64,000 bases of DNA from Magallana gigas. Taxonomy: Eukaryota. The notes under the pieces were generated by a model. That model searched no databases. It was not told where the DNA came from and saw nothing but the letters and a program-made list of their open reading frames with translations. Shown piece after piece: positions 857 through 10,466 of this stretch. The first letter of the stretch is position 1; the number at the start of each line of letters is the position of its first letter. The translations under genes were made by a program, and so were the position numbers. Location of the stretch: NCBI RefSeq assembly GCF_963853765.1, contig NC_088858.1, positions 29,822,001 through 29,886,000 on the forward strand, given 5' to 3'.

Positions 857-3800
857 TTACAGAATCCTTACAGCACTGCGATATGTCCTCGTCCCTTCGT
901 ATTCGGCCATGACCTCCAGATTTCTCATTCTGACTTCTTCATTGAGATCCTGTCGGGTTGAAAAATGAGCCCGACTATCGCGGGCGGTGAACGAGGCCCG
1001 GGTCTTCTCCCCAATGCTGAAAGCTTTGTTCTCCCTCCCGGCAAAAGAGGCCCGGACGTGGTTATTGGACTTTCCGTAGCTTCCTTTGAAAAAAAAAGAA
1101 AAAATTATTTTTGCATATGGTCGCTATTGAAATTATTTTGGAAAAATGCACCGATACGTATTGACAATCAGATACACATATCATCAGTTTATTCTGTGAA
1201 TGGCCAATGATGACTAGTACATATAGCTTACTCCTAATTAACTGCGCTTCGTCGTCGTCCGTCTCTACAGAATGGGCGGACTGTGCAGAATCTCTAAATG
1301 CGGTTGCGACACCATTGGACTGATTGTCACGAATGATTTTGTCCAGCTGGAACACAATGTCGGCTGCTCTACTGTCGAGTGGACTTCCCCCGCCCCCGTC
1401 ATACATCCCTGTAGTGTTCATATAGGTGGTTTCGTGTGCGTTCGAGTATATCACTTCCGGGTGTTCTGCTTCTTTTTTCGGAGAAGTATTGCGAGAGCTC
1501 CCTGATTTTTGTTTGAGACTTTTATTGTGAATTTGCTCTCGCTTTGAGTTTATTTCACTGAGAAGGGAACTATATTGCACACTACTTTGCCTTGAGGCTA
1601 GTTCCTTTGAATCGTTTTCTTTGGTTTCTGTAATAATATCCGCTTGTTTGGGAATGGTATTTGATGACGTCATGGAGTCCACCTCATCAAGATGGGTGGT
1701 ATGAAATCCGTTTGGTAAGGTTCCATTGCTTATCTGGGGAGTACCTACATTTGAAAATTGGCATACGTTTAAGTAGTTAGTAAGAGTTTCGACCTTCGAC
1801 TTACTAATAGGTGGTGGTCACATGTGTCTACGATGGAAAATCAAATGAATTACCAGATTAAAATTCGAATCGTGCGACTCTATCCAGACAAATATTAAGA
1901 TACTTAGTAATCCAAAATAAACCAAACTTACTCTGATCGCTAATGGATTGAGAGGAAATATTTTCATTGGAGAAACTCATGGATATTGATGAAAGCCGGT
2001 TTTGCAATTCAAATAACTCTCTCTGAAAAACAAAAAAGGTTCATTTGTCTATCAAAATTTCTAATATACATGTATCAAAAAACCTGCTGTTTTATGGCGG
2101 TAAGTCTCACCTGCTGTCTTTTCAGTTTTGTCGTCAGTTCTCTGGAATGTTCCTCCGATTTGGATTTCGCTTTCCTTAGATAATGCATCTCGTTCTCCAG
2201 TCGCTCGGCATATCTTCGTTTCCGAACTACAGTAAATTCAATTAACAACCACGTACTAATTAAGTATCTACTAACTGAAATAAAAATAGCTTCATATAAT
2301 GTTAGAAATCTAAGATATCTTACCACTACAGGCTCTGGGAATTCGACAAAAACGTAGGACAATGAGGTAGGTGGCTGCCTCCACCGCCTTATCATAACAG
2401 AGGACCTCGTCCCAGAAGATGGTAAACAGGAGCTCCATAGCACAGACCATCAGCACCACCAGGCCATCAAACACCTACAAACGACAGTCCTAACTATGTA
2501 TTTCGGGTTTTTTTTTTAACTGATATCTCGTTTCATTTTAATTGCATAGTGACTATTTTCTTTTTACACTACACGTCTTTAAAAACGGAATAATATATAT
2601 TTTGACTTCTTTAATACGTATTAGACTACTAGTATTGGCATATACTCTTCATATATATTTTTCAAAAATTGCAAACGAATGTGCAACGTATAATGATACA
2701 TATGAATTGGTTTTCTACAAATACCGCAGAGTTGCTCGAGCAAATGACACAATCTATAGATAGTCTTTAAGTAATGATTGAACTTAGTATTTGTAATCAA
2801 GCTAGGGCGAATCTGTTTAGTAGTCCAATACGCAGATCAGTGCAGTCCTTGGGTTCAAAGAAACTATAAACGTCCGTATGATCTGTGTAGTGATATTGTA
2901 TTATTGTTTTATGGTCAGTGATTGTGTATGACTGGTAATAAACACCGTCTGACGGCTAGGCCTCGCCCAGTGTGACACCACCATTAATTGTCAGGAACTA
3001 ACGCATGGGGACACTTTCCATACAGTTCCAATAACTGGTTGAGCACAGAATGTTTGTGCAGCTAAGGACTGAAAAGTCATACCCGCTCGCTCTCAGATGG
3101 GAAACAGTTTCTAATAGCTTGAACAGTTTAGGACATAAATCATCCCATTGACTCAAATCAATTGTCAGAAACCATTTATGATGATGATGATGATGATGAT
3201 GATGATTAAGACGACGATAATGAGAAAATACATATGATAATGGATGCTGTTATGGCCATGAAATGCAATGAAAATACATTATATATTTTTAAATTATAAC
3301 AGAGAATTTACATAAAGCAGACGTTAGCTTTCTAAGTGAGTGAATTTTTCCCGCGATCATTCATTGAAGTGATAGAATTTGTATTATCGAGAATAAACAT
3401 ACCATATCAATATTTCAAAGTCGTTATTAGCTTTAAATTTGCACGATATTTAGAGAATTTAACAGGTAAAATTCTACGTACGCGGACATGTAGAACAGTT
3501 TACATGATCTCTTCAGAAATCTGCTATTATTTTTTTTATATATAAAATTGATATCGAAATCCTTTGCTACATGTGGTACTTTATAACCACACTGAATGAC
3601 TTACAACTTTAGGAAATACTTACACAGTAGGTCTAACTTGCATTTTATGAACAAAATCAAACTATGCACTTAACATTAAATTTTGTGTTTGTTCAGCTTT
3701 GTTAGTATTTTTTTTTTACAATATTTACTTGTGGAAGTCTTTGACACTTAAATATTTTGACTTACATTTAGAAAATCTTTCCAGCACCCTGGACAACCAG

Positions 3801-9800: not shown

Positions 9801-10466
9801 TGGTAGCATTGTTCCTGCGATGGGAAAACTTAGCTCCTGGGCACCGGTAGAATCAATGAGCTGGAATGTCATTCCCGCGACGGACGAGAGCTGTGTTTGA
9901 CAGGTGGGCCTGAGTGGGGCAGGTACACGCTCGTAAAAACTCAGATGTAATTGTCTTCATGATTATGACTGTGTGCAATAATACAACCCCCAAAACAGGA
10001 ATACAAAGAACATAGGTGAAATGTTACACTAAAAAATTGTTTCTTTTTTTTTTTTTGGTCTTATGTCCCCAAATTTACAATGTAGGATAACGTCAATCAA
10101 GTTCTTGTCAATCTTAACTGATTTCCATATACGTAGTGGTGCTAAATTTGTACATTAACACTTGTTCGACATCTTAAAAAATTTCCTGCTACACGCAGGC
10201 TTCTTAAGGAACCAGTTTGTACGACATTAACGAACCGCTGCGTCAGCTGACTTGAAGCAAGCAGTAAATGAAGTGATGTTTAGTCAGAATCCACGTGAAT
10301 GGGCGTCGATAATCTTTTAACTCTTCTACCTCATTCATTTGCACGTACAAATATGCGAGATGAGTTATCATCAAACTGCATCGCGGTAAATTATTTACAG
10401 CTGTCAATGGATTTTTGAAAAACAATATGAAATTTAAAATAGTTCTTACCTGTCGTCCCTTCCCAT
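857..10466 (-). CDS. Hv-like (voltage-gated proton channel-like) voltage-sensor-domain protein, 494 aa, 9 coding exons
   Basis: Phase-consistent GT-AG exons 10450-10466, 6507-6634, 4225-4412, 3766-3819, 2324-2474, 2111-2226, 1932-2022, 1232-1744, 857-1083 (1485 nt, open to TAA). S1 YVILLTILDVLCITTELII, S2 AHYTSVTISCVFTIEVVSR, S3 NVFDGLVVLMVCAMELLF and S4 YLIVLRFCRIPRACS align by eye to human Hv1 S1-S4. A predicted coiled coil (RYAERLENEMHYL...ELFELQNRL) and a long polar tail follow. The first exon is the least certain. Confidence 0.85.
3178..3206. repeat. (ATG)n microsatellite, ~9 units
   Basis: Read directly; intronic. Confidence 0.9.
3964..4137. mobile_element. MITE with TA target duplication (Tc1/mariner-pogo type)
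   Basis: TIRs CAGTAAAACACG / CGTGTTTTACTG, TA on both sides, no ORF. Confidence 0.8.
5350..5463. mobile_element. MITE, same family as 3964-4137
   Basis: TIRs CAGTAAAACTCG / CGAGTTTTACTG flanked by TA. Confidence 0.8.
5482..6516. repeat. 25-26-bp minisatellite, ~39 units, consensus CTTTGATTCTGTCTACATATCTATAC
   Basis: Tandem units, homogeneous at ~6030-6430 and increasingly degenerate towards 5482. The right end overlaps the exon 6507-6634 donor. Confidence 0.9.

What the first reader, a model, noticed from the sequence alone, without database searches (positions are those of the whole stretch)
857..10466. Non-canonical Hv-like channel: selectivity Asp kept, signature S4 Trp replaced by Cys
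Seen: the spliced protein keeps equivalents of human Hv1 D112 (Asp32, codon 6556-6558), E119, H140, F150, E153, D174, an acidic residue at D185 and all three S4 Arg. S4 reads R-F-C-R-I-P-R (2334-2354) instead of R-x-W-R-x-x-R, with an extra Pro, D123 to Arg and E171 to Asn. Known: the S1 Asp confers proton selectivity, TMEM266 has Gly there, and W207 is treated as a defining Hv residue whose mutation greatly speeds gating. Inference: this may be a further molluscan Hv paralogue beyond the described Hv1-Hv4, with unusual gating, or a non-conducting voltage sensor. The ORF track fragments it and largely misses its frame.
Basis: partly seen in the sequence, partly recalled or inferred. Interest (0 to 1): 0.9.

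Follow-up and report, generated by a model that had tools for sequence, protein, structure and literature searches.

The report
Trp-less Hv-like voltage sensor in oyster
This is a real, expressed oyster gene for a proton-channel-like voltage sensor that keeps the proton-selectivity aspartate but has lost the tryptophan thought to be universal in such channels; it belongs to an untested family, so it is a useful natural experiment, not a new kind of protein.

Summary
RNA contigs and full transcript contigs show a minus-strand gene of ten exons, not nine. Exon 9 ends at 872 and splices to an exon at 570, so the 498-aa protein ends ...EGIPLTDL, not ...VRIL.

- **Residue calls:** Asp32 (6556-6558) and S4 R-F-C-R-I-P-R (2334-2354) are confirmed. 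A family profile aligns them to human Hv1 D112 and RLWRVAR.
- **Closest solved relative:** Hv1 (3wkv, 7e-13), ahead of Ci-VSP.
- **Annotation:** NCBI calls the gene an uncharacterised protein (C. gigas LOC105325827, C. angulata LOC128176122).
- **Family:** it is the oyster orthologue of a single-copy mollusc family.
  - All 12 pteriomorph sequences (oysters, pearl oyster, scallops) have S1 Asp and no S4 Trp (Cys; Leu in Saccostrea).
  - All 5 heterodont clam sequences keep Trp but have His for the Asp.
  - Gastropods have Ser plus Trp.
- **Prior record:** the Aplysia orthologue (XM_013082371) is already listed, untested, among seven putative HV genes in a 2023 review.
- **Not these:** it is not Hv1-4 and shows none of the TMEM266-specific residues.

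Whether it conducts protons is open. I favour a dimeric, PDZ-anchored, Trp-less proton pathway (about 0.5) over a silent sensor (about 0.35).

I could not build a tree with Hv1-4, TMEM266 and VSP. The scan holds one other note on this same stretch and none on other DNA.

The parts
10450..11015 (-). Exon 1: 5' UTR plus the first 17 nt of CDS (ATG 10466-10464; MGRDD + first two bases of the Ser6 codon)
   Evidence: Transcript contig L003 nt 71-650 maps to 11015-10450 and then jumps to 6636/6634. L004 maps to 10686-10450. P0014 and P0034 start MGRDDS.
7893..7903 (-). Probable alternative first coding exon 1b (ATGAAATCATA|gtaagt), giving isoform X2 (MKSF... in references; the window allele would read Y)
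   Evidence: Isoform X2 proteins P0022 and P0023 start MKSF-TNC. The sequence was read. This is inferred and not supported by RNA here.
6507..6634 (-). Exon 2: short N-terminus and S1, with Asp32 (6556-6558), Glu39 and Arg43
   Evidence: Junctions 6634 and 6507 appear in RNA contigs. Asp codon confirmed. S1 aligns to hHv1 S1.
4225..4412 (-). Exon 3: about 45-aa extracellular S1-S2 loop (two N-x-T sequons, CQQC) and S2 (His98, Phe108, Glu111)
   Evidence: Joints 4412|6507 and 3819|4225. Sequons and Cys positions. Alignment.
3766..3819 (-). Exon 4: S2-S3 linker (Arg115, CPGC, Asn129)
   Evidence: Joints. The old C. gigas model K1PA00 (P0017) skips this exon.
2324..2474 (-). Exon 5: S3 (Asp132, Glu143), S3-S4 linker (Cys155) and S4 R-F-C-R-I-P-R (2334-2354; Cys172 codon 2346-2348)
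   Evidence: All 24 Magallana, Crassostrea and Ostrea sequences in hand read LRFCRIPRAC.
2111..2226 (-). Exon 6: helical extension of S4, probable coiled coil
   Evidence: AF2 gives one helix 158-234 with pLDDT 86-94 in the 190-230 blocks. 11 of 18 a/d heptad positions are hydrophobic. Joints.
1932..2022 (-). Exon 7: end of the coiled coil and start of the low-complexity tail
   Evidence: Joints 2022|2111 and 1744|1932.
1232..1744 (-). Exon 8: Ser/Thr/Asn-rich tail, probably disordered and poorly conserved
   Evidence: joint 1083|1232 with a synonymous SNP at 1233. No Pfam hit. Low conservation in A1.
872..1083 (-). Exon 9: tail, ending in the conserved ...MAEYEGTRTYRSA
   Evidence: RNA contigs leave the window sequence at 871 (loose ends). 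L003 and L004 jump from 871 to 570.
315..570 (-). Exon 10: last 8 codons EGIPLTDL, stop TAG 546-544, then 3' UTR (at least to 315)
   Evidence: The same C-terminus occurs in all complete orthologues sampled (only the Pinctada model, P0019, ends differently).

Best explanation
Shown:
- This is the Magallana (Crassostrea) gigas/angulata copy of a conserved, single-copy, expressed mollusc gene.
- It encodes a 498-aa pore-less voltage-sensor protein of the Hv1/TMEM266 superfamily.
- Its parts are: a short N-terminus; S1-S4 with an intact charge-transfer centre (Phe108, Glu111, Asp132) and three S4 arginines; a glycosylatable, Cys-containing S1-S2 loop; an S4-continuous coiled coil; a roughly 260-aa variable tail; and a near-invariant C-terminal ...TYRSAEGIPLTDL that fits a class I PDZ ligand.

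Inferred mechanism:
- The protein dimerises through the coiled coil and is held at a membrane scaffold by its PDZ-type end.
- On depolarisation, S4 moves and opens a proton-selective path through the sensor itself, as in Hv1, using Asp32 against Arg173/Arg176.
- The Trp that latches Hv1 closed is replaced by a small hydrophobic residue (Cys172). I therefore expect faster, less temperature-dependent gating, opening at more negative voltages, and weakened external-pH sensing.
For: - **Gene and expression:** spliced RNA contigs in three runs; transcript contigs L003 and L004; a 112-member transcript-derived protein cluster.
- **Hv relatedness:**
  - The family profile hits the mouse Hv1 chimera 3wkv at 7.4e-13 and human Hv1 5oqk at 2.4e-9, both over S1 and S2-S4. 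Ci-VSP scores 7e-8, and Nav/Cav hits cover mostly S2-S3.
  - The nearest embedding cluster is 'Voltage-gated hydrogen channel 1' at 0.92, against TMEM266 at 0.85.
  - Heterodont and gastropod orthologues keep RLWR. That Trp is reported only in Hv1 and C15orf27 (PMC4621752).
- **Fold:** four TM helices plus a long S4 helix. Ci-VSP VSD gives Z 12.2, rmsd 2.6 A over 125 of 128 residues.
- **Conduction-relevant residues:** D112, E119, F150, E153, D174, an acidic residue at D185, R1-R3 and a small polar residue at the N214 site are all present. They are conserved in 12 of 12 pteriomorph sequences, apart from one Lys at R3 and two residues missing from the gapped Pinctada model.
- **Mutant precedent:** hHv1 W207A/S/F still conducts protons but gates 30-100 times faster (PMC4621752).
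- **Orthology:** the tree follows the species tree.
Against: - No current has been measured for any member of this family.
- The mid-S1 site varies across orthologues (Asp, His, Ser) while the coiled coil and C-terminal tail stay conserved. The family's shared function may therefore not need a proton filter.
- Asp alone is not sufficient. Putting Asp into HVRP1/TMEM266 did not make it conduct (PMC4148356).
- It fails the field's own Hv criterion of a totally conserved S4 Trp (PMC10911540).
- It has a Pro inside S4, Arg at the D123 site and Thr at the V109 site, whose effects are unknown.
- Pfam Ion_trans scores 21.5 bits, below the 25-bit cut-off, for the oyster protein.
- The AF2 model is only moderate (pLDDT 67, 13-sequence alignment).
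Confidence: 0.5

Rival explanations
1. It is a non-conducting voltage sensor. Like vertebrate TMEM266/HVRP1, the dimeric S1-S4 domain senses voltage (and perhaps Zn2+ or redox state) but passes no ions. It signals through its coiled coil, long tail and PDZ-anchored partners.
For: - The architecture matches TMEM266: VSD, then coiled coil, then a roughly 250-aa disordered tail (PMC6392501).
- The S1 'filter' site is not conserved across orthologues (D, H, S), whereas the tail end is nearly invariant.
- Adding Asp to HVRP1 does not confer conduction.
- The Hv signature Trp is absent.
Against: - Asp is strictly conserved in all 12 pteriomorph sequences, and His in all 5 heterodont sequences. This indicates selection on a polar mid-membrane residue.
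- The acidic residue at D185 is invariant, whereas TMEM266 has Met. The N214 site is Ser/Thr/Asn in all but one sequence (one heterodont has Asp), whereas TMEM266 has Asp217.
- Profile and embedding searches put Hv1 nearer than TMEM266.
Confidence: 0.35
2. It is a voltage-gated pathway for something other than protons, or a constitutive leak (omega-like or anion current). The altered gasket (Thr29), the S4 proline and the missing Trp would leave the sensor imperfectly sealed.
For: - Non-acidic substitutions of D112 make hHv1 anion-permeable (PMC10377628). The heterodont (His) and gastropod (Ser) orthologues carry exactly such residues.
- W207 mutants lose proton selectivity above pHo 8, and sea water is about pH 8 (general knowledge).
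- AcHv3, which has a proline in S4, shows a proton leak (PMC10911540).
Against: - The oyster protein itself keeps Asp.
- In hHv1, Trp mutants remain proton-selective at lower pH.
- There are no data for this family.
Confidence: 0.1
3. It is the invertebrate orthologue of TMEM266, not an Hv-side paralogue. This is a claim about ancestry and is compatible with either functional reading.
For: - The domain plan is shared.
- The family's ancestral S4 has the Trp that only Hv1 and C15orf27 share.
- The large Limulus relatives with the same tail motif have Val at the position 7 residues before the S1 Glu, by my reading of the supplement text. TMEM266 has V111 there.
Against: - TMEM266 orthologues are reported in vertebrates only.
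- TMEM266-specific residues (M185, K213, D217) are absent.
- TMEM266 ranks below Hv1 clusters in the embedding search.
- Lingula has a separate 'C15orf27 homolog' in the review's list.
Confidence: 0.08
4. It is an annotation or assembly artefact, or a decaying pseudogene.
For: - The older C. gigas model K1PA00 is broken: it lacks S1 and exon 4.
- Many database fragments read through introns 8 and 9 (P0049, P0051).
Against: - The ten exons give a clean open frame with canonical splice sites.
- The spliced form is seen in independent RNA runs.
- Orthologues are conserved, with a species-tree topology, across oysters, pearl oyster, scallops and clams.
Confidence: 0.01

Closest known systems
Voltage-gated proton channel Hv1 (HVCN1; structures 3wkv, 5oqk)
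   Same: - Pore-less S1-S4 domain followed directly by a coiled coil.
- D112, E119, H140, F150, E153, D174, an acidic D185 site, three S4 Arg and a small polar N214 site are all matched.
- It is the best solved-structure sequence match.
   Different: - No S4 Trp (Cys172), and Pro before R3.
- Arg at D123, Asn at E171, Thr at V109.
- About 45-aa glycosylatable S1-S2 loop.
- Only about 22 residues before S1.
- About 260-aa extra tail ending in a PDZ-type motif.
- 14 Cys in the sensor.
Aplysia californica LOC101854637 (XM_013082371), one of seven 'putative HV channels' listed in Chaves et al. 2023 (PMC10377628); also Biomphalaria LOC106051876
   Same: - Same family by profile search (P0050, E 3e-34).
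- Same short N-terminus with a conserved Cys.
- Same R-(I/V)-P after R2, Cys after S4, coiled coil, and tail ...(E/F)(D/E)G.(K/R)TY....GIP(L/M)T(D/S)L.
   Different: - Gastropods have Ser at the D112 site and keep Trp. They lack R3 (Phe), and in Aplysia apparently also R1, going by the scanned (OCR) supplement text.
- None has been tested electrophysiologically.
AcHv3-type 'unconventional' mollusc HV channels
   Same: Large intracellular C-terminus, enlarged S1-S2 loop, a proline in S4, and mollusc expansion (PMC10377628; PMC10911540).
   Different: - AcHv3 has xPWRxxR (no R1, Pro before Trp, Trp kept), a 299-aa loop and 980 aa.
- Here R1 is kept, Trp is lost, Pro lies after R2, and the loop is about 45 aa.
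CgHv4 (Crassostrea gigas minimal HV4, XM_011429833)
   Same: Same species group, with Asp in S1.
   Different: CgHv4 is a 200-250-aa conventional channel with RxWRxxK. It is a different locus and protein.
TMEM266 / HVRP1 / C15orf27
   Same: VSD, coiled coil and a long disordered tail; forms dimers; a His in S2 takes part in Zn2+ binding (His98 is the equivalent here); ancestral S4 Trp.
   Different: - TMEM266 has Val in S1, Met at D185, K213 and D217.
- It is reported in vertebrates only and is non-conducting.
- It has a roughly 100-aa N-terminus and a different C-terminal end.
Large (>450 aa) chelicerate and myriapod 'HV' genes (Limulus LOC111087200; second Scolopocryptops transcript)
   Same: Long C-terminus ending ...EFDPNKQDEDIPMTSL or ...NIPVTAL, similar to ...AEY/FxGxxTYxxxxGIPLTDL; coiled coil directly after S4.
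   Different: - S4 reads RLWRIKR (Trp kept, Lys instead of Pro).
- The comparison rests on reading scanned supplement text. It was not aligned or tested here.

Membership tests
Voltage-gated proton channel (HV), criteria of Chaves et al. (PMC10911540) | Four transmembrane segments S1-S4 and no pore domain | tested here: met
   - Hydropathy gives three clear hydrophobic peaks (S1-S3); the charged S4 scores lower.
- AF2 gives helices 19-43, 89-117, 127-149 and 158-234.
- VSD structures are the top hits.
- Nothing resembling S5-S6 follows S4.
Voltage-gated proton channel (HV), criteria of Chaves et al. (PMC10911540) | Acidic (D/E) selectivity-filter residue in the middle of S1 | tested here: met
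   Asp32 aligns with hHv1 D112, and Glu39 lies at +7 as E119 does.
Voltage-gated proton channel (HV), criteria of Chaves et al. (PMC10911540) | Totally conserved Trp in S4 (RxWRxxR) | tested here: not met
   Cys172 in the window. C, L or I in all 12 pteriomorph orthologues.
Voltage-gated proton channel (HV), criteria of Chaves et al. (PMC10911540) | At least two basic residues flanking the Trp position in S4 | tested here: met
   Arg170, Arg173 and Arg176 at three-residue spacing.
Voltage-gated proton channel (HV) | Voltage- and delta-pH-gated, proton-selective current | not testable with these tools
   Needs patch clamp. No paper mentions any locus of this family except the Aplysia accession in a list.
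Mollusc GIP(L/M)T(D/E/S)L-tail family (Aplysia XM_013082371 type) | Conserved C-terminal ...TY....GIP(L/M)T(D/E/S)L, R-(I/V/L)-P after R2, Cys two residues after R3, coiled coil directly after S4 | tested here: met
   Alignments A1 and A3, residue table, profile hit to Biomphalaria, supplement text for Aplysia.
Mollusc GIP(L/M)T(D/E/S)L-tail family (Aplysia XM_013082371 type) | Orthology (gene tree follows species tree, one copy per genome) | tested here: met
   - The tree gives oysters+Pinctada, scallops, heterodonts and a gastropod outgroup; the key splits have support of 97 or more.
- There is no second copy in the window.
- C. virginica has two near-identical loci.
TMEM266 / HVRP1 | Non-polar S1 (V111) and S3 (M185) core residues, K213, and D217 after R3 | tested here: not met
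   Asp32, Glu143, Pro175 and Ser179 occupy these sites. The features are taken from PMC6392501.
TMEM266 / HVRP1 | VSD + coiled coil + long disordered C-terminus | tested here: met
   This is shared architecture only.
AcHv3-type unconventional HV | S4 motif xPWRxxR (R1 lost, Pro before a retained Trp) with a very large S1-S2 loop | tested here: not met
   S4 reads RFCRIPR and the loop is about 45 aa.
Clade placement among Hv1-4, TMEM266 and VSP | Position in a rooted tree | not tested
   After the three capped protein searches, no Hv1-4, TMEM266 or VSP sequence could be obtained as a reference. Scanned (OCR) supplement text was not typed in.

The most novel reading that the evidence does not exclude
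Two hallmarks that the field treats as jointly defining HV channels have been split between sister bivalve lineages. Pteriomorphs keep the selectivity Asp and lost the Trp about 400+ Myr ago (divergence date from general knowledge). Heterodonts keep the Trp and replaced the Asp by His. If the oyster protein is a working proton channel, then RxWRxxR is not required in nature, and motif-based HV searches have missed a whole clade. That clade would be a natural, PDZ-anchored, fast-gating HV. The heterodont and gastropod forms would then be natural D112H/D112S variants, either anion-permeable or using a His shuttle.
Probability: 0.3. Interest if true: 0.75.

Novelty: new variant of a known kind. 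Interest (0 to 1): 0.55.

Why it matters
[quoted passage not shown] It is held responsible for four channel-defining properties: slow opening, steep temperature dependence, proton selectivity at high pH, and delta-pH-dependent gating (PMC4621752).

In this family Trp has been absent across oysters, pearl oysters and scallops, while the selectivity Asp, the charge-transfer centre and all three arginines are kept. The sister lineage shows the reverse pattern.

That gives ready-made, evolution-tested reciprocal 'mutants' for asking what the Trp and the Asp each contribute.

It also shows that the usual HV search criteria (which require Trp) exclude expressed relatives. HV-related diversity in bivalves, animals whose calcification and immunity depend on proton handling, is therefore probably under-counted.

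If the protein proves silent, it would be the first invertebrate counterpart, in function, of the TMEM266 type of stand-alone voltage sensor.

Tried and rejected
- **Pfam on single exon translations:** nothing meaningful.
- **phmmer of single exons (S1, S2, S3-S4) against PDB:** no hits even at E 10. Only the family profile reached Hv1.
- **The spliced protein itself:** it has no reference, so I did not type it into any tool. I used P0014 (99% identical) as its stand-in and say so.
- **The search for homologous proteins:**
  - With the full-length family profile it returned only the family plus intron-retaining fragments.
  - With the Trp-bearing Mercenaria S2-S4 region it found only 75 candidates and no Hv1.
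  - All three searches are now spent, so the requested tree with Hv1-4, TMEM266 and VSP could not be built.
- **Review supplement:** it prints such sequences, but as scanned (OCR) text with errors. I did not retype them.
- **Structure searches:**
  - Foldseek against PDB gave no hit at E <= 0.001, though VSDs lead the list.
  - The ESM Atlas shape search was uninformative.
  - VIA-align Z of about 12-13 is typical for any S1-S4-like helical bundle, TRPV included, so it supports the fold only, not Hv membership.
- **Is the gene among the nine C. gigas or eleven scallop HV accessions in the review?** I compared XP numbers with the listed XM numbers. There is no obvious match, but the XP/XM pairing cannot be verified here, so this stays open.
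- **Organism of P0007 and P0013:** only SRA run ids were returned.
- **A Cys-specific role for residue 172 (redox, metal or disulfide):** rejected, because Saccostrea has Leu and another taxon has Ile there.
- **Artefact or pseudogene reading:** rejected.

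
Full report
**What is in the window.**

On the minus strand between about 11015 and 315 lies a ten-exon gene. Reading the sequence and joining exons at canonical GT-AG sites gave a clean open frame. 2334-2354 translates to R-F-C-R-I-P-R and 6556-6558 to Asp.

**RNA support.**

I laid three RNA contig sets and one raw-read RNA run on 720-6700 (5,981 letters, within the operators' limit). Single spliced contigs gave joints 6507|4412, 4225|3819, 3766|2474, 2324|2226, 2111|2022, 1932|1744 and 1232|1083. 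These came from three runs belonging to different studies.

The same contigs leave the window at 871. Position 871/870 is a GT donor (GCT|gtaagg). The loose end matches an exon starting at 570, behind a ttttcag acceptor.

Two whole transcript contigs fetched later (L003 and L004) map block by block. The blocks are 11015/10686-10450, 6634-6507, 4412-4225, 3819-3766, 2474-2324, 2226-2111, 2022-1932, 1744-1232, 1083-872 and 570-315.

So exon 1 (ATG at 10466) is right. The protein has 498 residues and ends ...YRSAEGIPLTDL (stop 546-544), not ...YRSAVRIL.

**Identity of the gene.**

A phmmer search with the S3-S4 exon against 1.8 billion representatives gave 13 hits. Follow-up searches and cluster look-ups added more. 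P0014 is a 498-aa protein from transcript assemblies in a 112-member cluster. It differs from my model at six residues.

That cluster contains 'uncharacterized protein LOC128176122 isoform X1 [Crassostrea angulata]' and C. gigas LOC105325827 isoform X2. The organism is therefore a Magallana oyster, and the RNA runs are labelled as oyster. Isoform X2 begins MKSF, probably from an alternative first exon at 7903-7893.

No paper in the library mentions any of the bivalve locus names.

**The family.**

Orthologues were found in these taxa:
- Oysters: C. virginica, Saccostrea (two species), Ostrea edulis.
- Pearl oyster: Pinctada.
- Scallops: four species.
- Heterodont clams: Mercenaria, Mya, a Ruditapes-like sequence, and one of unknown taxon.
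- Gastropod: Biomphalaria.

A maximum-likelihood tree follows the species tree, with support of 97 or more for the pteriomorph and heterodont groups. There is no second copy in the window.

Almost all complete members share these features:
- A short N-terminus with an invariant Cys.
- S1-S4.
- The run R-x-x-R-(I/V/L)-P-R-x-C.
- A coiled-coil-like helix straight after S4.
- A variable tail.
- A nearly invariant end ...TYRSAEGIP(L/M)T(D/E/S)L, which fits the class I PDZ-ligand pattern S/T-x-hydrophobic (motif from general knowledge).

**Relation to known voltage sensors.**

A profile of the family's first ~220 residues hits Hv1 best among all solved structures. The mouse Hv1 chimera 3wkv scores 7.4e-13 and human Hv1 5oqk scores 2.4e-9, each matched over both S1 and S2-S4. 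Nav/Cav pieces follow, and Ci-VSP scores 7e-8.

That alignment fixes the residue equivalences.

| hHv1 | This protein |
|---|---|
| D112 | D32 |
| E119 | E39 |
| D123 | R43 |
| H140 | H98 |
| F150 | F108 |
| E153 | E111 |
| E171 | N129 |
| D174 | D132 |
| D185 | E143 |
| R205 / R208 / R211 | R170 / R173 / R176 |
| W207 | C172 |
| N214 | S179 |

An embedding search puts 'Voltage-gated hydrogen channel 1' clusters first (0.92) and TMEM266 lower (0.85). This is a lead, not a test.

An AlphaFold model from a 13-sequence alignment is of moderate quality (pLDDT 67). It shows four TM helices and one long S4-plus-coiled-coil helix. S1-S4 domains are its structural neighbours: Ci-VSP gives Z 12.2 and rmsd 2.6 A over 125 of 128 residues. 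TRPV S1-S4 bundles score the same, so this supports the fold only.

Pfam sees only Ion_trans. It scores below the cut-off for the oyster protein and above it for the clam orthologues.

**What the comparison across species adds.**

The Trp loss is not peculiar to this oyster. All 12 pteriomorph sequences lack Trp:
- Cys in Magallana, Crassostrea, Ostrea, Pinctada and four scallops.
- Leu in two Saccostrea species.
- Ile in one unknown taxon.

All 12 have Asp in S1, Arg at the D123 site and His at the H140 site.

All 5 heterodont sequences keep Trp (RLWRIPR). They have His in S1, His at the D123 site and Arg at the H140 site. Biomphalaria has Ser in S1 and keeps Trp.

On the tree each state changes once. 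All 24 Magallana, Crassostrea and Ostrea sequences in hand read LRFCRIPRAC.

Two conclusions follow. Cys chemistry at position 172 is not essential, because Leu and Ile also occur. And the mid-S1 residue is fixed within each lineage but differs between them. I have no explanation for the reciprocal pattern.

**What is already known.**

The field's search criteria for HV genes require 'a totally conserved tryptophan' in S4 (PMC10911540). [quoted passage not shown]

The 2023 review divides mollusc HVs into two groups:
- Conventional: Hv1, Hv2 and CgHv4, with RxWRxxR/K and 200-250 aa.
- Unconventional: AcHv3-type, with xPWRxxR, huge loops and long tails.

Its table and supplement list seven Aplysia genes. 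The seventh is XM_013082371 (LOC101854637). It has a short N-terminus with the conserved Cys, Ser in S1, W-x-V-P-F-V-C in S4, and the tail ...EFDGSKTYRNEDGIPMTSL. It is therefore the gastropod orthologue of this family.

The same supplement prints large Limulus and myriapod 'HV' proteins ending ...DIPMTSL and ...NIPVTAL. This suggests an older protostome lineage. I read that from scanned text only and did not test it.

None of these proteins has been characterised.

It is Val. TMEM266 orthologues are reported in vertebrates only.

**How it most likely works.**

Shown:
- An expressed, conserved, pore-less voltage-sensor protein.
- An intact charge-transfer centre and three gating arginines.
- External acidic partners (E39, E143).
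- An extracellular loop with two N-glycosylation sequons and conserved cysteines. Cys84 in the loop is nearly invariant and Cys155 in the S3-S4 linker is invariant in bivalves. A disulfide between them is my inference.
- A helix continuous with S4 and a moderately hydrophobic heptad pattern.
- A PDZ-type C-terminus.

Inferred:
- A coiled-coil dimer, tethered to a scaffold.
- S4 movement opens a proton path through each sensor, with Asp32 facing Arg173/Arg176.
- Human W207A/S/F channels still conduct protons but open about 100-fold and close about 30-fold faster. They activate at more negative voltages and lose external-pH control and selectivity above pHo 8. I therefore expect a fast, weakly latched channel.

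Against this reading:
- The S1 site varies across orthologues while the tail is conserved.
- Adding Asp to HVRP1 does not make it conduct.
- An S4 proline in AcHv3 goes with leak and weak voltage dependence.

I put proton conduction at about 0.5, a silent TMEM266-like sensor at about 0.35, and a non-selective or anion leak at about 0.1.

**Novelty and score.**

This is not a new kind of protein. Its family is already in the databases and, for Aplysia, in a published list.

What is new is the documented, RNA-supported gene model and the lineage-wide pattern. An Asp-bearing, Trp-less subclade fails the accepted HV signature, and its sister shows the reverse combination. I class it as a new variant of a known kind, with interest 0.55.

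**Limits.**

- The spliced protein could not be passed to tools by reference, so P0014 served as proxy.
- The scan holds one other note on this same stretch (s1-394976) and one on the intron minisatellite (s1-394939), and none on other DNA.

Noticed in passing
window 5915-6514 (wider 5482-6516), intron 2: A 26-bp minisatellite (about 23 copies, 82% matches) begins right at the exon-2 donor and repeats a donor-like ...AAAG|GTATA... motif, creating many decoy donors. All RNA contigs use the first one (6507|6506).
   Followed up: partly
window 3960-4140 and 5348-5440, introns 3 and 2: Two copies of a SINE-like repeat have RNA word depths in the thousands, against about 85-95 for the gene's exons. 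Many reads run off into unrelated sequence, so this is an abundant, transcribed interspersed repeat.
   Followed up: no
window 7893-7903 (-): Probable alternative first coding exon (ATGAAATCATA|gtaagt) for isoform X2 (MKSF... in C. gigas and C. angulata references). The window allele would give Tyr instead of Phe at residue 4.
   Followed up: partly
window 33124-33195 (-): The first 72 nt of transcript contig L003 match here, 22 kb upstream of exon 1 (98.6% identity). This is either a distal 5' exon/promoter or a chimeric assembly.
   Followed up: no
window 11674-13719 (+): An intronless 681-aa ORF with RING and B-box zinc fingers (TRIM-like) lies head-to-head with the Hv-like gene. Only about 660 bp separate it from the mapped 5' end of exon 1, so the two may share a promoter region.
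   Followed up: partly
window 1084-1231 and 571-871 (introns 8 and 9): Dozens of database protein fragments (P0049, P0051-P0096) read through intron 8, and some through the exon-9 donor to ...VRIL. These are unspliced RNA or DNA-derived contigs.
   Followed up: partly
protein residues 9, 20/23, 81/84, 95, 120/123, 155, 178 (exons 2-5): Of the 14 sensor cysteines, Cys9 and Cys178 are invariant across the family, Cys155 is invariant in bivalves, and Cys84 is nearly so. CxxC at 81-84 is shared by pteriomorphs. CPGC at 120-123 is found in oysters only. Cys84 and Cys155 are on the outside; Cys9 and Cys178 are on the inside.
   Followed up: partly
C. virginica (P0015 / P0100): C. virginica has two loci (LOC111127968 and LOC111130457) encoding 496-aa proteins in the same 90% cluster. 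This is either a recent duplicate or an uncollapsed haplotype.
   Followed up: no
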